IMG/VR virus record: IMGVR_UViG_3300028840_002431 | Coordinates: 1-64,000 of that record | Length of the DNA: 64,000 bases | Reading direction: 5' to 3' (one strand) | Shown here: positions 30,136-37,488 of the stretch, one piece after another | How the letters are laid out: each line of letters starts with the position of its first letter | How positions within the stretch are numbered: position 1 is the stretch's first letter | The notes under the pieces: model-generated | What the model was told of the DNA's origin: nothing | The model's database searches: none | The model's input: the letters and a program-made list of their open reading frames with translations, nothing else | Program-made: the position numbers and the translations under genes

Positions 30136-31710
30136 TTATCCTTCTCTCTCGTAAGGACCTTCTTCAACCTCTCTCTGATATACATAGTCACATTCCATGT
30201 TGCGGGTGTCTGAGTCCCACTTGATGTACGGCTGGTTCCCCTGGTCGTAGCTGTACGCAGTCCCAGGTATCATGTCTCTCGGGGTTTCAACGGGAGCGCT
30301 CTCGACCTCAGGCACCTCACTGGTGGCGTTTACCTCATTGTCGGCCTTGTCTCCCTCGTAATAGTCCGAACGGGCGACAGAAGGCATGACATCAAGAGGG
30401 AGCATAGAACAAGCGGTCTTCCACTTCGCGTTACGACCGCCTACAGCCAGTTCAACGGTCGGTGTCGTGTCATCACGCTCTGTCGATCCGCCATCCAGGT
30501 CGCCGGGTAGTTCCGAAGACGGCCCATAAACACCACCATCAGAGTCAACAGTCCCATAACCTCCCGCGCCCTGGCCATGAGCATCGTTGCCATCGCCGTA
30601 CCCGATTCCGAAGTCGTAGCCTTTTGTGGGAGTGGGGTCGGTGTCCTTGTCCGGGAGATTTGAGGCCGCGCTTCGCATTGGTTCGATCTGAACACCTTCC
30701 GCAGCCTCAAGTTCCGCCTCTACCGATCCCGGCGTTACCAGGGTCTTAGACTTGGTCGAAGTCTTCAGGGTGCGGACAGTAGTACCCCGCACGCTGGCCG
30801 CTAACTCCCGATCCCGCTCCGCTGTCTTGTCCAACAGGTTGTTGTCCCACTCGCTTTGATAGAGGTACTCGTTCGGGACGCCGTCAGTCCGGCTCCATTC
30901 GTCGTGTGTGGACATCGGCTCTTCTGTGTTATGAGAGCCAAAAGGGCCAGTCTGATCCACATCGGCCCGGTCCAGGTGTTGGACACGAGGTCCAGGCAAC
31001 GTCTGGGTTGGAAGGGAACTACCCCGTCGATCGTAACCATACTCAGAAGCCTGTTTGACGTGCTGCCCGGACTCGACGACCTCCGCAGCGTCCGGCAGGT
31101 TAGCGTTATCAGGTAGCTGGGATTTCGGCTCCCCCTCCCCTTCTTCCATCTCCGCCCGCTCACCGCTCTGCTCTGCCTCCTCCATACCTTCTTCGACTTC
31201 TTCTTCCGGGTTCTCCATGATTTGCTCGGCCTCGCCCACGAGCCTTTCCACGCTTTCGATGTCGTTTCTTTCCAACTCTGCGAGCTTCGGCTTCCAGTGA
31301 GGGGCGTTGATCTCATCGTGAATGGTGTCGGAAATCGAAGACAACCCTTCAGCGGCGTTATAGAGCGCCTTACGTACCTCCTTGATGGACATCACATAAC
31401 CCTGGCCGCCGATGAGGCCGTCAGGGGATACTGTAGAAGACTTGATCTTGGACAACTGCCGATGAGCCGTCAGTGTGTGGCCCAGAGCAACGCTCATCGC
31501 CCAGAGTGTCTGGGCCAACGGCTTGAGAGCCTTGGGATCATAAGGAAAGTTCTTTGGGATCGCACGCTTCATGAAGCTGCCACCGCCGAAGTCATCCTTA
31601 GACTTGAACTGGTCTGGATCGAACTCCGCGACCTTTATTCGAGGTTCGAGGTGAGCCTCTCGCAAATGGCGGTCCAGAACGGCCTTTGTCTTTTCATACG
31701 CTTGCGGCAT
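30136..31710 (-). CDS. Hypothetical acidic protein, putative head-associated
   Basis: Start reassigned to ATG 31710, just after the upstream stop; repeated K/R-x-A-S-x-L-P units. Confidence 0.7.
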   Translation of the reverse strand: MPQAYEKTKAVLDRHLREAHLEPRIKVAEFDPDQFKSKDDFGGGSFMKRAIPKNFPYDPKALKPLAQTLWAMSVALGHTLTAHRQLSKIKSSTVSPDGLIGGQGYVMSIKEVRKALYNAAEGLSSISDTIHDEINAPHWKPKLAELERNDIESVERLVGEAEQIMENPEEEVEEGMEEAEQSGERAEMEEGEGEPKSQLPDNANLPDAAEVVESGQHVKQASEYGYDRRGSSLPTQTLPGPRVQHLDRADVDQTGPFGSHNTEEPMSTHDEWSRTDGVPNEYLYQSEWDNNLLDKTAERDRELAASVRGTTVRTLKTSTKSKTLVTPGSVEAELEAAEGVQIEPMRSAASNLPDKDTDPTPTKGYDFGIGYGDGNDAHGQGAGGYGTVDSDGGVYGPSSELPGDLDGGSTERDDTTPTVELAVGGRNAKWKTACSMLPLDVMPSVARSDYYEGDKADNEVNATSEVPEVESAPVETPRDMIPGTAYSYDQGNQPYIKWDSDTRNMECDYVYQREVEEGPYEREG

Positions 31711-31711
31711 T

Positions 31712-31996
31712 TTATCCCTTGAGAGGTTCACCGTTATCGTCAAACAAGCGCTCGATGAAGAAGCTGCCGTCGCCCTCCTTCTTGAGCGCCCAGAGGTCGC
31801 GGTCGCTCTTATGGATCAGAGTGTCCGACGACAACCGAACGAAGTTGTGCAAATCCTTGATCGAGGCGACCTTAGCCCGCCCTGTCATGGTTTGCGGACG
31901 TAAGATGTGTTCTTCGCGCTTGAACAGAGCATCCAAGCCCGTGGCACCCGATACTTCCATTTGACCAAGATCAAAATCTGCCATCCCTAACCTCAT
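31712..31996 (-). CDS. Hypothetical protein
   Basis: 94 aa; ATGA overlap (alternative start 31984, MADFDLG). Confidence 0.65.
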   Translation of the reverse strand: MRLGMADFDLGQMEVSGATGLDALFKREEHILRPQTMTGRAKVASIKDLHNFVRLSSDTLIHKSDRDLWALKKEGDGSFFIERLFDDNGEPLKG

Positions 31997-32910
31997 GTGA
32001 TATTGAGCGTCACCGGCACGTCTACGCTCATGTTAGAACTATATCCTGTGAATCTGAGAGTCTCATTGTAAGAACCGGAGGCCAGACTAGCGGACGGCGC
32101 TACCGTTACCGTAATCGGTTGAGAAGCACCTCCATTAAGAGACCCGTAAACAGGTGAATAACTGGTCAGCCATGTGGACCCCACCAACTGACGGATCTGA
32201 TAGTCGAGAACCGACGTTGGCGGACCGGAGTTCGTGAGATTAATTTGTTGTGACGGAATCGGCGGGTATGGTCCCGTCAGGGGCTTTGCCACATTGAACG
32301 TCAAACTCGTCGGCAACACCGTGATTTCGGAAAGCGGGCGCACGACAATGTTAACAGCCACCGTTTGCGGGCTGTTTGTGGCCGACGAACTCTGTACCGT
32401 CAATGTAGCCGAGTAAGGGCTGTTTATGGCCAGAAGGCTGGCGCTATCCACCGAAACATCGAAACGACCCGACTCGTTGGAAGCCAGACCACCTATGTTT
32501 GCCGGTAAGGCGGCCACATACGCGGCCGACGATGTAATCGTGACCGCCAGAAGCGAACCTAAGATTCCGTTGTTAGTGACCGTTACCGACTTGGCTTCCG
32601 AGACACCCCGACCTTCGTCTACGACGAAATCCAGAGTTAGAGGCGCGAGTAAGATGCTGGGCCGGTAAGCTAACAACATCTCCACAATGGAGTCGGCCAT
32701 CGCCTGGACGACCTCTCCTGGGATCGGTATGGAATCTCGCAAAAGGCCGTACGGCGAGACTATGTCCCTGACTTCCGTCGATACCGTTGACTGGGACACG
32801 TCGATGCGAGTCACCCACTTCCACGCACCGCACGGCAGCGAAACCTGAAATTGGTAATCTTGGTATTGGAGTGTAGACAAGGGAATAGTCCTCGTCTGAT
32901 CCCACTCCAT
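31993..32910 (-). CDS. Ig-like (BACON-type) tandem-domain protein
   Basis: Two repeats of P.TL.F......S..[IV].[LV]TN.G...L.Y.[IV]....W[LV]...P..G.L......V.V....L....Y...L........[VI].V.L.[VI]. Confidence 0.7.
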   Translation of the reverse strand: MEWDQTRTIPLSTLQYQDYQFQVSLPCGAWKWVTRIDVSQSTVSTEVRDIVSPYGLLRDSIPIPGEVVQAMADSIVEMLLAYRPSILLAPLTLDFVVDEGRGVSEAKSVTVTNNGILGSLLAVTITSSAAYVAALPANIGGLASNESGRFDVSVDSASLLAINSPYSATLTVQSSSATNSPQTVAVNIVVRPLSEITVLPTSLTFNVAKPLTGPYPPIPSQQINLTNSGPPTSVLDYQIRQLVGSTWLTSYSPVYGSLNGGASQPITVTVAPSASLASGSYNETLRFTGYSSNMSVDVPVTLNIT

Positions 32911-32922
32911 AAAAGAAAACCC

Positions 32923-32932
32923 TATAATTATA
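32923..32932 (-). promoter_or_regulatory. TATAATTATA palindrome containing a consensus -10 hexamer at the head of the structural operon
   Basis: Intergenic and AT-rich; TATAAT reads on both strands; no good -35 at 17 bp. Confidence 0.4.
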
Positions 32933-32940
32933 CGACTTGT

Positions 32941-33087
32941 TCAGTCCGCTCGAACCAATGTGTAGGCGGTCCGGGACTCGTCAAGTTCCCGCTTATAGGT
33001 CTCTTCTAACTCCTTCTCGGCCGCTTCCATCGCCGCGAGTGCGTCACTCTCAGCCTCTATTATAGGGAGCGGCTCCTTCTCACACAC
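32941..33087 (-). CDS. Small acidic protein (48 aa), not in the ORF track
   Basis: GTG TGT GAG AAG...GAC TGA gives MCEKEPLPIIEAESDALAAMEAAEKELEETYKRELDESRTAYTLVRAD; start overlaps the upstream stop. Confidence 0.5.
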   Translation of the reverse strand: MCEKEPLPIIEAESDALAAMEAAEKELEETYKRELDESRTAYTLVRAD

Positions 33088-33721
33088 AGCGGTCCACGCC
33101 CCTATCACTCCACTGCGGTAGGCTCACGGCCCTGAGAATATTGAAATTCTTGGATGCGATTGAGGAGAATATCTTATGGTATGGTTGGAACTGGTCATCA
33201 CCCTCGGCCGCATCCTTAAGAACCTCAACGGCCTTGAAAAACCGATGGCGGACACGTCCTTGTGTTAACTTCAACTTGGACGCCACTTCTGATTGGCACG
33301 TTGTCTGCCACATCCCCACCAAAATATTGATGTCGATTTGCTCAAAGATCTCGGCAAGATCCTTCCGCATGTCCTCTTCCGTGACCGTAGGAATGGACAG
33401 CAAGAACTTGATGCGTTGAATCCCCCGGTCCAGCCGGTAACTGATAGCCGCCTGGGTTACATCGAAGATTTCGGCTATGTCGGCTTGGCGTTTCTTACAG
33501 ACGTAATAGAGATATATAAGATCTGCCTCGCGTTCTGGTATCCGGTCAAGAAGGGGCGCGACAATCGTTTCATAGTCATCAGTGGAGAACAACGCCTCCA
33601 TCTCAGCCTCTTCTTCTTCCCTCTCTAGTCTCTCTCTTTCGTCTATAGGTGTTGGATCAGGTGCTGCAAAACGGTTAGCTAACTCAGCGGGATCGACCGG
33701 AATAACATAGCCACTTGACAT
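33080..33721 (-). CDS. Sigma-70 region 4-like protein with two HTH units
   Basis: LDRIPEREADLIYLYY...QADIAEIFDVTQAAISYRL is a canonical r4 HTH; second unit QSEVASKLKLTQGRVRHRF; AAGGAG SD. Confidence 0.75.
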   Translation of the reverse strand: MSSGYVIPVDPAELANRFAAPDPTPIDERERLEREEEEAEMEALFSTDDYETIVAPLLDRIPEREADLIYLYYVCKKRQADIAEIFDVTQAAISYRLDRGIQRIKFLLSIPTVTEEDMRKDLAEIFEQIDINILVGMWQTTCQSEVASKLKLTQGRVRHRFFKAVEVLKDAAEGDDQFQPYHKIFSSIASKNFNILRAVSLPQWSDRGVDRCV

Positions 33722-33770
33722 CGACTCGACTCCTTGTAACGGCCATCGTAGCCGTATCAGAGGCTCTCCT

Positions 33771-35555
33771 CTAAGGTTGTTTTGGGAAGAACGCAGCTAG
33801 AATAGACTTAGGCTTTACCTCAATACCCTCTAGCTCGGCTTCTGCCCTACTCTGATCTGGATTCGATTCGATCTGTCTGAATGGTACGTCTTTCAGAGCT
33901 AACAAGTCAATGTTTTTAATAACCCGATCCTCGTTAGCACGCAATTTGGAAACCTGACTTTTTCCTAACCCGGCCAAATTAGATCCTAACAGGGCCTCGA
34001 CTGAACCATACAGTTTGATGAGTTTGGAGGCTGTCTTAGGACCAAAGCCGGGGACTCCGGGTATATTATCTGAGGTGTCTCCGCTCAACGCCCGTAGGTG
34101 GATCATACTCTCCGGAGCCACTCCATACTCCCTCTTGACGAGCGCCGGGTTGTATAACCTTTCCTTACCCATCCCCACCTTTGGGCACAACTGGTGAGTG
34201 AACTCCGATACCAACTGTAACAGATCCCTGTCCGTGGAAATCAGCACGTTTGGGCGGCCTTCGAGCGGCCCTCTCACCAGGGCGGCCATAACATCGTCAG
34301 CCTCTTCGTCTGGATTAAACGCCTGAATGACGCCGAATGACGGCAAATTATCTCGAAGCCAATCCATCTCGAAGGTGTTGGCCGCTGCCCCGGACCGCGA
34401 AATCCGGTTGGCCTTGTAGTCAGGGAACATAGCCTTCCGCCGTTGCGACGAACCATCCCAACACACGAAAACCCGCGCCTTCGGGAATCTCTTTTTGTAG
34501 GAGCCAAGGCTTCTTAGAAACCCAACGATGGCACCGGTCGGTCGGCCCTGAGAGTCCGTGAGGTCGCTCAAGCCGGGAGCGGAAAGACATCGAATGTATA
34601 ATTGGGTGCCGTCCACGACCAAATTCATAGGAGTAGGTTCTGTCATTTCTCTTACGTCCGAGTATATCGTAAAGATCTTGGCGCAAGCTTCTGATAGAAA
34701 CCGCACCTCCTGGTGTTTCTGAGACATGAAGCTTAGGTCCGGGAGAGGAGCGCTAACAGTATGAATCTGACTCCGTAAAGAAACCCCTGTCTGTAGGTTT
34801 CGTAGCTCCTGGAACTTGGCCCACAAGGGGTCAAAATCTATCCGGGAATGGTACGCTCTTATAAAATGGTACGTGGCCCGGCTCTTTTCGATCCAACCAT
34901 CCATACGACCGAGATTCCGATGGCCTTCCCGGACCCCTTCCAACTCGGAACCGGACCAGCGGGCTAACATAAGAGCACCCCGCGCCCACTCCGTTAGCTT
35001 TTCCAACTTCGTCCGGTGGACCACGTGAGGAGGTTTTGATTTCAACCTCAAGAACGCTCTGGGTAATGTTACCAACCGATCTGTGGATCTTAATTGAATG
35101 TGGACCGTCACCGAATCGTGCTCATGAATCTCCTCCCGCACGACAGCTTCGATGTTTTTGTAAGGGCCTGAGGTTATAACTACGATGTCGTCAACCTCTA
35201 TGCCCTGATCCACCTCAACCTTTATCTGCTTACGCAGTTGGTCTATCTGCTCCGGGGAGACAGTCGCCAGACGCTTGTCCTTCTTAACTCCGGTCGGAAC
35301 GTATAAAGGTCCCTGGACGTATTTCGTGTCTACCAGCCGGGCGTAGTGGGTCTCCGTGTGCCTGTGTTGAACGAAGGCGTACCCGTCCACAAGGTAATGG
35401 AAAACCCTCTGCTCCCCACGTTGAACCACTGACGCCGGTACGAAAACTTCGGCGTCCCGGATATGATGACGGATCGAATTCCGTACCATATCCGGATCTT
35501 CATTTTCTGCTTTAGAGGTAAGCTCTAATACTACCCACTGGTTTTCCGTACCCAT
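33771..35555 (-). CDS. NusG-like (NGN+KOW) domain fused to a Pol I-type 5'-3' exonuclease / flap endonuclease
   Basis: N-term WVVLEL...EVFVPA...DGYAFV and IEVDDIVVITSGPYKNIEAVV (KOW); C-term VVDG, VCWDG, YKANR, EEADDV, STDRDLLQL, GDTSDNIPGVPGFGPKTA. Confidence 0.85.
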   Translation of the reverse strand: MGTENQWVVLELTSKAENEDPDMVRNSIRHHIRDAEVFVPASVVQRGEQRVFHYLVDGYAFVQHRHTETHYARLVDTKYVQGPLYVPTGVKKDKRLATVSPEQIDQLRKQIKVEVDQGIEVDDIVVITSGPYKNIEAVVREEIHEHDSVTVHIQLRSTDRLVTLPRAFLRLKSKPPHVVHRTKLEKLTEWARGALMLARWSGSELEGVREGHRNLGRMDGWIEKSRATYHFIRAYHSRIDFDPLWAKFQELRNLQTGVSLRSQIHTVSAPLPDLSFMSQKHQEVRFLSEACAKIFTIYSDVREMTEPTPMNLVVDGTQLYIRCLSAPGLSDLTDSQGRPTGAIVGFLRSLGSYKKRFPKARVFVCWDGSSQRRKAMFPDYKANRISRSGAAANTFEMDWLRDNLPSFGVIQAFNPDEEADDVMAALVRGPLEGRPNVLISTDRDLLQLVSEFTHQLCPKVGMGKERLYNPALVKREYGVAPESMIHLRALSGDTSDNIPGVPGFGPKTASKLIKLYGSVEALLGSNLAGLGKSQVSKLRANEDRVIKNIDLLALKDVPFRQIESNPDQSRAEAELEGIEVKPKSILAAFFPKQP

Positions 35556-35581
35556 CCCACTTTTCGACTACACTGCGAAAA

Positions 35582-36988
35582 TTACTTTAGCAACGGAGAC
35601 TGTATCTTTTTTCGTAAAAGGGCTTCGAATTTCCTACGCCACTCAGCCGGTGACATCACCTTGTGTTCCCGGTTTCTCGGTGGCCGCGCTGTCATATCTG
35701 ACTCTCTGCTTCGGGGCATCTCCGCGTTAACGACGTGCTTCTCGATGTCCGTTGGTACAGTAGGGTCCGCGAACTCGTCAACAATTTGAGGAGGCGGATC
35801 TGACTTTTTAACGGTCTCGGCCTTCACTTGTTCTTGCTCTTGAGGCTTAGGCTGCTCCTGTTCTTTGGGTTTGGGTTGCTCTGGCTCTGGCCCGTTGGAT
35901 TGCTTCTTACTGCCCGAGAAGACCACAGGAGGCGACGGTTTGTCTGTTGGAAGGTTGCCTGGGAGTTGAGAAAAAACGACGGCGTCTCTGACGAGACTTA
36001 ACTTGGTCGTGTACTTAGAACCCAAGAACCAGTAAGCAAAGCGGACAACATCTGAGCCGTATTTGGCGTGAACCTTCTCAGCTAACCCTTTATCAACGAA
36101 CGAGAAATCAGCGTAAATGCCACTGGCCACCCGGTACGTGTTCATGGCCGCTTCGGCTATACCCGCAGACACTTCTTCCGGCGTCACCATCTCACACGCC
36201 TGATCGATTAGCTCTATGGTTTGCTTGGGATCGTCCAGATGTAACAGGATCTGGTAGTAGAGGGTAACAACAGACAAGTGGAGATAGGACCGCACGTTGT
36301 CTATCGTCACGTCGCCCAACTGCGAAATCATCTCCAGCTTGTTTATTACGTCCCGGACATGGCCGTCAGAATGGTCGATGACGATGTAGACAGCGTCATC
36401 CTCGAACTTGACCTCCTCCTTCTCCAGAATCATACGCATCCGTTGGAGGACCTCGTCCCTTGTGACCTTACGGATCGTGTACTCCTCGCAACGAGACCGG
36501 ATCGCACCACGGATCTTTTCCGCCTCCGTGGTGCAAAACATCCCGATCATCTTCTTGTCCTCGATCGGTTTCAGGAGCACATCTTGAGCCGCCACGCTCA
36601 TCCGGTGGGACTCGTCAAAGAGGTAGATACGCTTTGGGGCGTTCTCCAAAACGTAAGGCAATTCCTCTATGATTTTACGAACGTGCTCGACGGTACCGTG
36701 GCTCGCAGCATCCCGCTCCGTGAACGGCCCCGGCTGTTCTTCCAGGATCGTGGTGCAATTATCACACTTGTTACACGGCTCAGGATCGCTGGTATCCAGG
36801 TCTTGACAAAGCATCGCCCTCGCGTGAATCCGGCTTACGGTGGTCTTACCCCGGCCGAAAGCTCCCGCGAAGATATAGCTTGTGTCGAAAGCCGTCCCGT
36901 TCTTTAGGCGAGCCTTCAGGAGACGGACGTTACCGTCTTGACCTAGGACATCAGCAAACCGTAAAGGTCTGTAAACAGTATCCCACAA
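35582..36988 (-). CDS. dnaX: DNA polymerase III gamma/tau subunit
   Basis: YRPLRFADVLGQ, GAFGRGKTT, Zn cluster CQD...PCNKCDNC, YLFDESH, IRSRC. Confidence 0.92.
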   Translation of the reverse strand: MWDTVYRPLRFADVLGQDGNVRLLKARLKNGTAFDTSYIFAGAFGRGKTTVSRIHARAMLCQDLDTSDPEPCNKCDNCTTILEEQPGPFTERDAASHGTVEHVRKIIEELPYVLENAPKRIYLFDESHRMSVAAQDVLLKPIEDKKMIGMFCTTEAEKIRGAIRSRCEEYTIRKVTRDEVLQRMRMILEKEEVKFEDDAVYIVIDHSDGHVRDVINKLEMISQLGDVTIDNVRSYLHLSVVTLYYQILLHLDDPKQTIELIDQACEMVTPEEVSAGIAEAAMNTYRVASGIYADFSFVDKGLAEKVHAKYGSDVVRFAYWFLGSKYTTKLSLVRDAVVFSQLPGNLPTDKPSPPVVFSGSKKQSNGPEPEQPKPKEQEQPKPQEQEQVKAETVKKSDPPPQIVDEFADPTVPTDIEKHVVNAEMPRSRESDMTARPPRNREHKVMSPAEWRRKFEALLRKKIQSPLLK

Positions 36989-37005
36989 CCCCTTGGTCCC
37001 CCGGT

Positions 37006-37488
37006 CTACTGTTCTTGCGTGTCTACTGTGGAATCGACAACCTCTTGAACGCGCTCTTCGATGTTGAGCCGCTGGGCGACCTCCACCATACCCATCAAGG
37101 TGTCGGTCCAGGCCCCATGCCGATGAAGGATACTCGTGAACTCCCTTACATCCGGCTCACGCATAGACCACTTGAACTCTCCGGTATCCTCATCTTCGTC
37201 CCCGGTGCAACACTCCAGAAGGTGGTCCACAAGGGCCGTTTGCTGACGCTCAGTCATCTCGTTCCAGACCTCAAGAGCCACCTCGATAATGAAATCCTTC
37301 TCAAGTAGGAACTCCATCGCGCCAGTGACCTTTTTAGACTTCCCGCCGACAGGAACCCCGTTTTTCTTGCTGGCCACGTCCACACAAATGTATTGAATTC
37401 GGGCGGTCGCCAGTTCCGGGTGGTACGACGGAATCAGTTTTTTAGCGATCTCTTCCACCATCTCGGCGGGGCCATACAGTTTTGGCAT
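37006..37488 (-). CDS. Phage metallopeptidase-like protein with degenerate HExxH
   Basis: DFIIEV...W......ALVDHLLECC...W....PDVREF..I..RHGAW matches the phage putative metallopeptidase pattern, but HELxH reads HLLEC. Confidence 0.6.
   Translation of the reverse strand: MPKLYGPAEMVEEIAKKLIPSYHPELATARIQYICVDVASKKNGVPVGGKSKKVTGAMEFLLEKDFIIEVALEVWNEMTERQQTALVDHLLECCTGDEDEDTGEFKWSMREPDVREFTSILHRHGAWTDTLMGMVEVAQRLNIEERVQEVVDSTVDTQEQ

What the first reader, a model, noticed from the sequence alone, without database searches (positions are those of the whole stretch)
33771..35555. NusG-like transcription factor fused to a 5'-3' exonuclease / flap endonuclease
Seen: one uninterrupted 594-aa ORF with NGN+KOW (~aa 1-170), a ~135-aa helical linker with ~33-aa periodicity, and an intact Pol I-type 5' nuclease with all acidic motifs and HhH but no polymerase domain. 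Known: NusG-family proteins bind elongating RNAP, and 5' nucleases remove RNA primers, flaps and RNA in R-loops. I do not know of this fusion. Inference: a nuclease tethered to RNAP that could clear R-loops or transcription-replication conflicts, process RNAP-made primers, or couple late transcription to nicked replicating DNA. A possible internal start (34646 or 34628) could also give the free nuclease.
Basis: partly seen in the sequence, partly recalled or inferred. Interest (0 to 1): 0.8.

Follow-up and report, generated by a model that had tools for sequence, protein, structure and literature searches.

The report
Phage NusG-like factor fused to flap nuclease
A 416-kb phage encodes one protein that joins a NusG-type RNA-polymerase-riding module to an intact DNA flap nuclease through a variable helical spacer; the fusion is real, conserved in a whole clade of huge phages and apparently undescribed, but what the tethered nuclease does at the polymerase is still inference.

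Summary
Window 33771-35555 (-) is one 594-aa ORF with four parts:
- NGN + KOW, aa 1-175.
- A spacer of tandem helical repeats, aa 176-305.
- A Pol I-type 5' nuclease with every catalytic carboxylate invariant, aa 306-594.
- No polymerase domain.

The NusG assignment rests on profile, NCBIfam and fold matches. It is not an assembly artefact: more than 160 colinear homologs exist, and 55 of 56 IMG/VR loci have both halves in one ORF. The module was not found in 185,579 cellular genomes.

Context changes the emphasis. The conserved unit is the NusG-like gene plus the next gene, a sigma-region-4-only protein. They sit between the DnaX-like clamp loader and the late (terminase, portal) genes. In a sister clade (70/70 loci) the NusG-like protein stands alone in that slot, with no FEN within 10 kb. 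In a subclade it carries a different extension. The nuclease is therefore a clade-specific cargo on a phage NusG paralog.

My best reading is an RNAP-tethered 5' nuclease acting on RNA:DNA hybrids or flaps where late transcription meets replication. That activity is inferred, not shown. The proposed internal start is not supported. I found no paper describing this. I rate it a new variant of a known kind, interest about 0.68.

The parts
33771..35555 (-). Whole gene: 594-aa NusG-like / helical-repeat spacer / 5' flap nuclease fusion
   Evidence: ORF. (more than 120 full-length homologs at 41-72% identity). (one ORF in 55/56 loci).
35226..35555 (-). NGN domain (aa 1-110), with the family motifs WVVLEL, VFVPA and LVDGYAFV
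   Evidence: NusG profile hits. (alpha/beta fold; Foldseek hit to E. coli NusG). (invariant residues).
35031..35225 (-). KOW domain (aa 111-175), predicted five-stranded beta-barrel
   Evidence: KOW hit in 30/34 members. (aligned to the NusG KOW). (strands 124-173).
34641..35030 (-). Spacer (aa 176-305): four long helices built from tandem repeats of about 35-45 aa. Copy number varies between relatives, giving spacers of about 65 to 220 aa.
   Evidence: helices. (identity 0.23; length 64-175 aa in A1). (multimodal lengths in 163 proteins). (repeat by hhalign: 98%, E=3e-13). (no look-alikes).
34122..34622 (-). 5'-3' exonuclease N-terminal (PIN-like) catalytic domain, aa 312-478, including the arch region with invariant Y380, K381 and R384
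   Evidence: 87.4 bits. (invariant acidic residues). (FenA, Taq and Pol I 5' nuclease matches).
33888..34121 (-). H3TH / SAM-fold DNA-binding domain of the nuclease, aa 479-556, with invariant D493 and D496
   Evidence: 67.2 bits..
33771..33887 (-). C-terminal segment (aa 557-594 plus stop) with the conserved helix motif [IL]xP[DE]x[IL]LxAFF, followed by a variable tail
   Evidence: Its function is not tested. The idea that it binds a sliding clamp is speculation only.
33080..33721 (-). Invariant downstream partner gene: a 213-aa protein with a sigma region-4 domain plus a second HTH and no region 2
   Evidence: region 4 only. (TM 0.8-0.87 to isolated sigma-4 domains). (adjacent in 70/70 stand-alone loci and all 57 loci). 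(P0072 is a NusG-FEN-sigma4 fusion).
35582..36988 (-). Invariant upstream neighbour: DnaX-like (gamma/tau) clamp-loader ATPase. Its stop lies 26 nt before the fusion gene. The two genes overlap in L001 and L002.
33054..33069 (-). Sequence CTCCCTATAATAGAGG, 11 nt after the partner gene's stop. It resembles a CCTAT-containing element found at the same place in many related loci. It is a possible promoter or loading site for the first late operon.
   Evidence: 6-mers present in 12-13 of 55 loci against 0-2 of 53 controls. (it does not recur elsewhere in the window). Weak evidence.

Best explanation
The gene encodes a two-function protein of a huge (416-kb) phage.

The N-terminal NGN+KOW module is a phage-specific, specialised NusG paralog. 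Like all NGN domains, it is expected to sit on the upstream face of the elongating host RNA polymerase, on the beta' clamp helices. It works together with the sigma-region-4 protein encoded immediately downstream. Both genes lie at the head of the long co-directional late (structural and packaging) gene block.

In this clade the KOW end of the factor carries a cargo: a catalytically intact Pol I-type flap endonuclease / 5'-3' exonuclease. It hangs on a length-variable spacer of tandem helical repeats.

The most likely consequence is that the nuclease is held at transcribing polymerase. There it would remove the 5' RNA of RNA:DNA hybrids and 5' flaps (R-loops, or transcripts taken over as primers) that arise where late transcription and replication share the template.

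Shown here: the architecture, the conservation, the intact active site, the synteny and the clade-specific nature of the fusion.
Inferred: RNAP binding, cooperation with the sigma-4 protein, and the substrate of the tethered nuclease.
For: Architecture and fold:
-.
- The active site is complete and invariant and aligns to the FenA catalytic aspartates.

The fusion is under selection:
- Both domains keep 56-64% mean identity while the spacer drifts to 23% and changes repeat number.
- It is one ORF in 55/56 IMG/VR loci, down to 39% identity.

The NusG module behaves as an adaptor platform in one syntenic slot. It occurs stand-alone in 70/70 loci, with FEN, or with a different extension of about 220 aa.

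Links to transcription:
- The sigma-4 neighbour is invariant.
- P0072 is a NusG-FEN-sigma4 fusion and P0174 is a sigma-NusG-like fusion.
- Terminase, portal and protease genes follow on the same strand.

Established knowledge:
- All NGN domains contact the clamp helices and gate loop on the upstream face of the elongation complex (PMC7819879; bioRxiv 10.1101/324400).
- Specialised NusG paralogs are encoded at or next to the operons they control (PMC11685472).
- Flap-superfamily nucleases are the presumed RNA-primer-degrading enzymes of jumbo phages (PMC7824862).
- Precedents for NusG-family-dependent recruitment of 5'-3' nucleases to RNAP are Spt4/5-FttA (PMC11616081) and Spt5-Xrn2 (PMC11695829).
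Against: - No experiment or structure shows that this NGN binds RNAP. It scores far below the cut-offs of every named NusG subfamily.
- The sister clade manages without a tethered FEN, so tethering is not essential to the NusG/sigma-4 function.
- I could not inventory whole genomes. The fused FEN may simply be the phage's only replicative primer-removal nuclease.
- Pol I-type FENs need a duplex with a 5' end, and nothing shows such substrates arise at this polymerase.
- AF2 gives no confident inter-domain geometry (pTM 0.52).
Confidence: 0.4

Rival explanations
1. The fusion is a convenience. The NusG-like factor and the FEN each do their usual separate jobs (late-transcription elongation or antitermination, and Okazaki primer or flap removal at the replisome). 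They are joined only for co-expression or stoichiometry, and the nuclease has no function at RNA polymerase.
For: - The gene lies at the junction of the replication and late modules, where fusion of neighbouring genes could happen.
- The sister clade has the NusG-like protein alone.
- The spacer is poorly conserved and has no recognisable domain.
- One locus (L113) has the halves in different frames.
Against: - The fusion is kept in one ORF in 55/56 loci across deep divergence.
- No FEN gene is adjacent in any of 70 stand-alone loci, so simple read-through of existing neighbours is not visible.
- The spacer is not random. It is a maintained helical repeat array whose copy number varies.
- A second, different cargo on the same platform suggests the tether itself is used.
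Confidence: 0.25
2. The protein is a replication-coupled late-transcription activator, comparable to T4 gp33/gp55/gp45. The FEN domain (and perhaps its C-terminal LxAFF helix) recognises nicks, flaps or the sliding clamp on replicating DNA. The NGN (on the beta' clamp helices, the sigma region-2 site) and the sigma-4-only partner (on the beta flap) then load host RNAP at late promoters.
For: - The gene order clamp loader, NusG-like, sigma-4 is strictly conserved immediately upstream of the late genes.
- The partner has region 4 but no region 2.
- Sigma/NusG-like fusions exist: P0174 and P0072.
- A conserved CCTAT-type element follows the partner gene.
- Established knowledge: NGN and sigma region 2 use the same clamp-helix site. 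T4 late transcription is clamp-dependent (my own knowledge).
Against: - All steps are inferred.
- The stand-alone clade lacks the FEN, so replication coupling cannot depend on it there.
- The full catalytic site is invariant, which a mere DNA-structure sensor would not need.
- The tail motif is not always terminal and may simply be the last helix of the FEN fold.
- The DNA motif does not recur in the window.
Confidence: 0.15
3. The NusG-like module has been repurposed and does not bind RNAP. It anchors the nuclease to a replisome or recombination partner, so the protein is purely a replication or repair enzyme.
For: - It scores far below every curated NusG subfamily cut-off.
- From the alignment, read by eye, the KOW position that is Phe165 in E. 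coli NusG (the Rho/S10 contact, from my own knowledge) is an invariant Arg156 here.
- It is embedded in a replication gene block next to the clamp loader.
Against: - The invariant neighbour is a sigma-4 protein, and fusions to sigma domains occur.
- The NGN signature motifs are retained.
Confidence: 0.1
4. The protein is a torpedo-type terminator or RNA-processing nuclease. The tethered 5'-3' nuclease degrades the nascent transcript from its 5' end, as in Spt5-Xrn2 or Spt4/5-FttA.
For: - NusG-family factors recruit 5'-3' ribonucleases in archaea and eukaryotes (PMC11616081, PMC11695829).
- From my own knowledge, the FEN and XRN catalytic domains belong to the same PIN-like superfamily.
Against: - From my own knowledge, Pol I-type FENs are structure-specific for duplexes with 5' flaps or ends, not single-stranded RNA.
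- A terminator at the head of a late operon more than 30 kb long would be counter-productive.
Confidence: 0.05
5. The fusion is an artefact: a missed stop, a frameshift or a chimeric assembly joining two genes.
For: One related locus (L113) shows the halves in different frames.
Against: - The identical protein is found on 5 contigs.
- More than 160 colinear homologs come from independent samples.
- It is one ORF in 55/56 loci.
Confidence: 0.01

Closest known systems
Specialised bacterial NusG paralogs (RfaH, LoaP, UpxY, ActX/TaA)
   Same: - NGN+KOW architecture.
- A divergent copy dedicated to a few long operons.
- Encoded at or next to the operon it is expected to control.
- Weak but consistent profile similarity: LoaP E=2.6e-6, UpxY E=2.4e-4.
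   Different: - Phage-encoded and not found in 185,579 cellular genomes.
- Far below each subfamily's cut-off.
- Always paired with a sigma-4-only protein.
- Carries a C-terminal enzymatic cargo, which none of the known paralogs has.
- No recruitment element (ops-like DNA or leader RNA) was identified.
Stand-alone Pol I-type flap endonucleases (M. smegmatis FenA, E. coli ExoIX/Xni, phage T5 D15) and the 5' nuclease domain of Pol I/Taq
   Same: - Same fold: TM 0.77-0.83 normalised to the target.
- Same two Pfam domains above threshold.
- Same catalytic carboxylates.
   Different: - Preceded by about 305 aa of NusG-like module and helical repeats.
- No polymerase domain.
- Below the equivalog cut-offs for Xni and the named 5'-3' exonucleases.
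Spt4/5-FttA (archaea) and Spt5-Xrn2 (eukaryotes)
   Same: A NusG-family factor brings a 5'-3' nuclease to the elongating polymerase (PMC11616081, PMC11695829).
   Different: - Those are non-covalent complexes with ribonucleases of other families, and they act in termination.
- Here the link is covalent, the nuclease is a DNA-structure-specific FEN, and the setting is a bacterial virus.
Phage T4 late-transcription machinery (gp55, gp33, gp45 clamp, gp44/62 loader)
   Same: Small phage-encoded sigma-fragment-like factors act on host RNAP. They are functionally tied to the clamp and clamp loader and to replicating DNA (my own knowledge). The gene neighbourhood here juxtaposes a clamp loader, an RNAP factor and a sigma-4 protein.
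   Different: - No sequence relationship was tested or found.
- T4 uses no NusG fold and no nuclease.
- Replication coupling here is conjecture.
Stand-alone huge-phage NusG-like proteins of the sister clade (for example P0196 in L004; loci L008-L077)
   Same: - Same family: 30% identity and shared motifs.
- Same syntenic slot and same sigma-4 neighbour.
   Different: - They are 165-190 aa and end right after the KOW, with no spacer and no FEN.
- A subclade instead adds about 220 aa with weak winged-helix resemblance.

Membership tests
NusG/Spt5 family | N-terminal NGN domain (alpha/beta fold with the WY.V and PGY.FV-type motifs) | tested here: met
   - Family profile against the PDB: T. maritima NusG E=3.4e-9.
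- NCBIfam nusG E=2e-7 over positions 1-155 of 172.
- Foldseek to E. coli NusG E=7e-10.
- Motifs WVVLEL and LVDGYAFV are conserved.
NusG/Spt5 family | KOW beta-barrel following the NGN | tested here: met
   - Pfam KOW in 30/34 members, best E=4.5e-5.
- Aligned to the NusG KOW.
- Five predicted strands at aa 124-173.
NusG/Spt5 family | Binds the RNAP beta' clamp helices / beta gate loop and modifies elongation | not testable with these tools
   Inferred only, from the universality of NGN-RNAP contacts (PMC7819879; bioRxiv 10.1101/324400).
Housekeeping NusG (TIGR00922 equivalog) | Score at or above the curated cut-off of 135.7 bits | tested here: not met
   30.9 bits.
LoaP / UpxY antiterminators (NF033641, NF033644) | Score at or above the curated cut-offs (125 and 100 bits) | tested here: not met
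   27.7 and 21.1 bits. No RfaH model was hit.
Specialised NusG paralog (functional class) | Encoded at or next to the long operon it controls | tested here: inconclusive
   The position fits. The gene pair lies directly upstream of about 33 kb of same-strand late genes (terminase, portal, protease), and this is conserved in 127 loci. Control of that operon is not shown.
Pol I-type 5'-3' exonuclease / FEN (PF02739 + PF01367) | Both domains above the Pfam gathering scores | tested here: met
   87.4 bits against 34.3, and 67.2 bits against 40.
Pol I-type 5'-3' exonuclease / FEN | Complete set of metal-binding carboxylates | tested here: met
   Ten acidic residues are invariant in 39 sequences. 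D420, D444 and D496 align with FenA D125, D148 and D208.
Pol I-type 5'-3' exonuclease / FEN | Nuclease activity on flaps or 5' ends | not testable with these tools
   Needs an enzyme assay.
DNA polymerase I | Polymerase (and 3'-5' exonuclease) domains C-terminal to the 5' nuclease | tested here: not met
   The protein ends at aa 594. The Pol I models match only profile positions 4-245 of 889.
Xni / ExoIX (NF007017) | Score at or above 261 bits | tested here: not met
   87.4 bits.
Sigma-70 family (for the partner gene 33080-33721) | Region 2 (clamp-helix and -10 binding) plus region 4 | tested here: not met
   Only region 4-like segments are found (aa 30-105, and a second HTH at 112-178). No region 2 hit appears in Pfam, NCBIfam, the PDB profile search or Foldseek.

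The most novel reading that the evidence does not exclude
The NusG-like NGN and the sigma-region-4-only neighbour together form a two-piece substitute for a sigma factor on host RNAP. The NGN takes the beta' clamp-helix site normally used by sigma region 2, and the partner takes the beta flap. In the FEN-bearing clade, this factor is loaded from nicks, flaps or the sliding clamp of replicating phage DNA. That would be an independent reinvention of T4-style replication-coupled late transcription, built on a NusG fold.
Probability: 0.12. Interest if true: 0.9.

Novelty: new variant of a known kind. Interest (0 to 1): 0.68.

Why it matters
NusG/Spt5 is the only transcription factor family conserved in all life. 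Its KOW end is known as a docking platform that couples RNAP non-covalently to Rho, ribosomes or nucleases.

Here a virus has hard-wired a DNA flap nuclease to that platform. The same platform exists naked, or with another cargo, in sister phages, and it is always paired with a sigma-4-only protein at the replication/late-gene border.

If the NGN binds host RNAP, this gives three things:
- A natural, genetically tractable example of a nuclease delivered to elongation complexes.
- A handle on how very large phages reconcile transcription with replication.
- A previously unrecognised family of phage NusG paralogs.

It also suggests that the protein could serve as a tool for targeting activities to transcribing polymerase.

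Tried and rejected
- **Internal start for a free nuclease (34646/34628).** Met304 is conserved in 12/39 relatives and Met310 in 4/39. There is no SD-like sequence upstream. Not supported, though not excluded without transcript or proteome data.
- **C-terminal LxAFF as a sliding-clamp motif.** It is conserved, but often followed by variable tails, and it is modelled as the last helix of the FEN fold. Left as speculation.
- **Known domain in the spacer.** Pfam, PHROGs and the ESM Atlas gave nothing.
- **Stand-alone copies of this exact N-terminal module by word search.** Only one fragment was found. The exhaustive profile search was needed to find the sister clade.
- **The search for related loci with the broad alignment A3.** It failed for lack of conserved stretches. 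It was repeated with the narrower A4.
- **Cellular homologs.** None in genome contigs.
- **GenBank phages.** Only the nuclease half matches, at 37% identity or less.
- **RNA element or structure in the leader after the partner gene.** No Rfam hit with E<=1 in 31500-37200. The fold z-score is only -2.1.
- **Recurrence of the CCCTATAAT-type motif in the window.** Not above chance.
- **Sigma-70 promoter and terminator scans.** At the level of shuffled sequence.
- **P0215, a 3,604-aa hit with nine 'NGN-like' stretches.** It is an Ig/RTX repeat protein, so the match is spurious.
- **Literature.** Seven full-text searches and three targeted reads found no description of a NusG-FEN fusion or of huge-phage NusG paralogs.
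Full report
**1. The observation**

Window 33771-35555 (minus strand) is one uninterrupted ORF of 594 aa with an ATG start.

The C-terminal half is a Pol I-type 5' nuclease:
- Pfam 5_3_exonuc_N covers aa 312-478 at 87.4 bits. Pfam 5_3_exonuc covers aa 479-556 at 67.2 bits. Both are above the gathering scores.
- PHROG 'exonuclease' gives E=3e-31.
- NCBIfam Pol I models are matched only over their first ~245 positions.
- There is no polymerase domain. The protein ends about 40 residues after the H3TH domain.

On the single sequence the NusG and KOW hits are sub-threshold (16.7 and 15.5 bits), so I tested them separately:
- A profile of 34 family N-termini hits T. maritima NusG with E=3.4e-9 over both NGN and KOW. 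Further NusG, Spt5 and uL24 KOW hits follow.
- 27 of 34 members hit Pfam NusG and 30 of 34 hit Pfam KOW individually.
- NCBIfam nusG gives E=2e-7.

An AlphaFold2 model built on 39 homologs has mean pLDDT 86. It shows:
- an alpha/beta NGN (aa 1-110);
- a five-stranded KOW barrel (aa 120-173);
- four long helices (aa 176-305);
- a FEN fold (aa 311-594).

Foldseek against the PDB returns:
- M. smegmatis FenA (E=6e-20, TM 0.77 normalised to the target), ExoIX, Taq and T5 FEN for the C-terminal half;
- E. coli NusG from the lambda antitermination complex (6gov_G, E=7e-10) for the N-terminus.

**2. Is the nuclease intact?**

In an alignment of 39 family members at 43-72% identity, D315, D367, E417, E418, D420, D421, D442, D444, D493 and D496 are invariant. 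So are Y380, K381 and R384 in the arch region.

The phmmer alignments to wild-type FenA and to its D125N mutant chain differ exactly at the residue aligned with D420. Counting along the same alignment places D444 and D496 opposite FenA D148 and D208, the other two residues mutated in PDB entries 6c35 and 6c36. The active site is therefore complete and under purifying selection.

**3. Is the fusion real and how widespread is it?**

- The identical protein occurs on five contigs. The longest is 416,539 bp, identified as IMGVR_UViG_3300028840_002431.
- The word-indexed search lists its 120 best hits, nearly all colinear and full-length (536-690 aa, down to 41% identity), on contigs up to 549 kb.
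- In 57 IMG/VR loci found with the N-terminal profile, 56 contain the FEN. In 55 of those, both halves lie in one ORF without a stop, down to 39% identity.
- The exception is L113, whose halves overlap by about 160 nt in different frames. This is either a frameshift or a true split.
- No relative was found in one genome each of 185,579 bacterial and archaeal species.
- GenBank phages match only the nuclease half.

The fusion is not an artefact, and it is a feature of uncultivated huge phages.

**4. The spacer**

- It is the least conserved part: mean pairwise identity is 0.23, against 0.57 (NGN), 0.64 (KOW) and 0.56 (FEN).
- Its length is multimodal across 163 proteins, with main modes near 97, 132, 147, 167 and 177 aa.
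- Profile-profile comparison of consecutive segments gives 98% probability (E=3e-13, 34 columns) for one pair. Two other pairs give 74-80%.
- It has no look-alikes.

It is a tandem array of helical repeats of about 35-45 aa whose copy number changes.

**5. Context**

All genes in the region lie on the minus strand.

Upstream lies a replication and recombination block:
- GroEL-like chaperonin;
- clamp-loader delta and delta' subunits;
- ribonucleotide reductase;
- NAD-dependent ligase;
- RecD2-type helicase;
- RecA;
- SbcCD-like proteins;
- a PD-(D/E)XK nuclease;
- a Toprim primase-like protein;
- a 'phage metallopeptidase'-family protein;
- a DnaX-like clamp-loader ATPase.

Downstream come a 213-aa sigma-region-4 protein, an Ig-like protein, and then the terminase large subunit, portal and head protease.

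The order Toprim, metallopeptidase-like, clamp loader, NusG-FEN, sigma-4, Ig-like is kept in 45 of 57 IMG/VR loci. It is truncated only by contig ends in most of the others. It is also kept in three loci at 43-57% identity.

**6. The sister clade and other architectures**

An exhaustive profile search with the N-terminal module found 377 proteins. About 70 are strong hits, mostly fusions. A second tier consists of 165-190-aa stand-alone proteins sharing the family motifs.

- In IMG/VR, 70 of 70 loci of this stand-alone form have the same order: clamp loader, NusG-like, sigma-4. None has a FEN within 10 kb.
- A maximum-likelihood tree of the modules splits, with 99/93 support, into two clades. 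One holds the stand-alone forms plus four 383-406-aa proteins. The other holds all 41 sampled fusions plus a few short forms.
- The 383-406-aa proteins occupy the same slot and add about 220 aa with only weak winged-helix resemblance.
- Short forms inside the fusion clade are genuine stand-alones next to sigma-4 genes (L080, L082).
- P0174 is a sigma (regions 2+4)-NusG-like fusion, 43% identical to the window's module.
- P0072 is a NusG-FEN-sigma-4 triple fusion.

The invariant unit is therefore the NusG-like module plus a sigma-4 protein. The FEN is one of at least two cargos hung on the KOW end.

**7. The partner**

- The sigma-4 protein is more conserved than the fusion in the same genomes: 67-89% identity against 43-72%.
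- Its profile hits only sigma region 4 in the PDB (SigF 1.2e-7, FliA).
- NCBIfam sees two region-4-like segments and no region 2.
- Its AF2 model superposes on isolated sigma-4 domains with TM 0.8-0.87.

**8. How it most likely works**

Established knowledge:
- All NGN domains bind the clamp helices and gate loop on the upstream face of the elongation complex (PMC7819879; bioRxiv 10.1101/324400).
- Specialised paralogs are encoded at the operons they serve (PMC11685472).
- KOW domains are docking platforms.
- Flap-superfamily nucleases are the presumed primer-degrading enzymes of jumbo phages (PMC7824862).

Putting this together with sections 2-7, I read the protein as a phage NusG paralog for late transcription by host RNAP. 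In this clade it carries an active FEN on a tunable tether.

The committed mechanism is that the nuclease is kept at the upstream side of transcribing polymerase. There it removes 5' RNA from RNA:DNA hybrids and 5' flaps (R-loops, or transcripts used as primers) on a template that is being replicated at the same time.

Architecture, conservation, active-site integrity and synteny are shown. RNAP binding, cooperation with the sigma-4 protein and the substrate are inferred. My confidence is about 0.9 for the architecture and family assignment, and about 0.4 for the mechanism as a whole.

**9. Rivals**

- Independent functions merely fused (0.25).
- A T4-like replication-coupled late-transcription device, in which the FEN senses nicks or the clamp and the NGN plus sigma-4 substitute for a sigma factor (0.15).
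- A repurposed NusG fold that binds a replisome partner (0.10).
- A torpedo-type RNA nuclease like Spt5-Xrn2 or Spt4/5-FttA (0.05; PMC11695829, PMC11616081).
- An artefact (0.01).

**10. Comparison and membership**

- The protein is a member of the NusG/Spt5 superfamily by fold and profile. It is not a member of housekeeping NusG, LoaP or UpxY: it scores 30.9, 27.7 and 21.1 bits against cut-offs of 135.7, 125 and 100.
- It is a member of the Pol I-type 5' nuclease family by domain scores and catalytic residues. It is not Pol I and not Xni.

**11. Novelty**

JGI's pipeline already names many of these proteins '5'-3' exonuclease/transcription antitermination factor NusG', so the domain pair has been machine-noticed.

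Full-text searches found no paper describing it:
- No paper in the library holds both 'NusG' and 'jumbo phage'.
- The huge/jumbo-phage papers listed have no occurrence of 'NusG', including the 2026 review.
- The huge-phage survey does not mention NusG or antitermination.
- The jumbo-phage comparative overview does not mention KOW, Spt5, NGN or antitermination.
- The 2021 NusG review mentions no phage-encoded paralog, fusion or nuclease.

I class it as a new variant of a known kind: a new NusG paralog family with a new, covalently attached enzymatic cargo.

Noticed in passing
window 33080-33721 (-): The downstream partner is a sigma-region-4-only protein with a second HTH (TTCQSEVA..L..TQG.VRHRF) and no region 2. 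It is more conserved than the NusG-FEN itself. It is adjacent to a NusG-like gene in every one of the 127 IMG/VR loci examined. It deserves study as a family in its own right.
   Followed up: partly
window 33054-33069 (-) and 32920-32928 (+); L008-L077, just after the sigma-like gene: In the related loci, a conserved DNA element follows the partner gene's stop: (C)GGTTTTC..CCTAT(C/G), then about 15 nt, then GGTAG(A/G)AG. The window has CTCCCTATAATAGAGG there, and an inverted CCCTATAAT copy just before the next gene's ATG. This may be a late promoter or a factor-loading site.
   Followed up: partly
L007:3612-5237 (P0174) and P0072: Two other fusions involve the same module. P0174 is a full sigma factor (regions 2+4) followed by a NusG-like module, in a different phage context (helicase, Ku). 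P0072 is an 840-aa NusG-FEN-sigma-4 triple fusion.
   Followed up: partly
L078:5009-6196, L079:5028-6248: These are NusG-like proteins of 383-406 aa in the same slot. Their extra ~220 C-terminal residues match neither the spacer, the FEN nor the sigma-like protein. They give only weak winged-helix leads.
   Followed up: partly
L113:5989-8017: This is the only related locus where the NusG+spacer and FEN parts are in different frames, overlapping by about 160 nt. The cause could be a sequencing error, a programmed frameshift or a real split.
   Followed up: no
L008, L010, L011, L035, L037, L042, L049-L052 (clamp-loader gene upstream of the NusG-like gene): The clamp-loader match is broken into two pieces 0.4-1.5 kb apart in several stand-alone-clade loci. 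This suggests an intein or another insertion in the ATPase gene. L078 also has a 1,144-aa neighbour with intein and LAGLIDADG domains.
   Followed up: no
window 37006-37488 (-): A 'putative phage metallopeptidase' family protein (PF18894, E=1e-25) is conserved between the Toprim primase-like gene and the clamp loader in nearly all loci. This is an odd companion for replication genes.
   Followed up: no
window 1-64000: Nearly all long ORFs lie on the minus strand, and GC skew is negative in nearly all 2-kb bins across the window. This is consistent with one very long co-directional transcription and replication unit.
   Followed up: no
P0215: A 3,604-aa Ig-like/RTX repeat protein scored E=2e-21 against the NusG-module profile through nine repeated stretches. 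It is a repeat-driven false positive, worth remembering when the profile is reused.
   Followed up: yes
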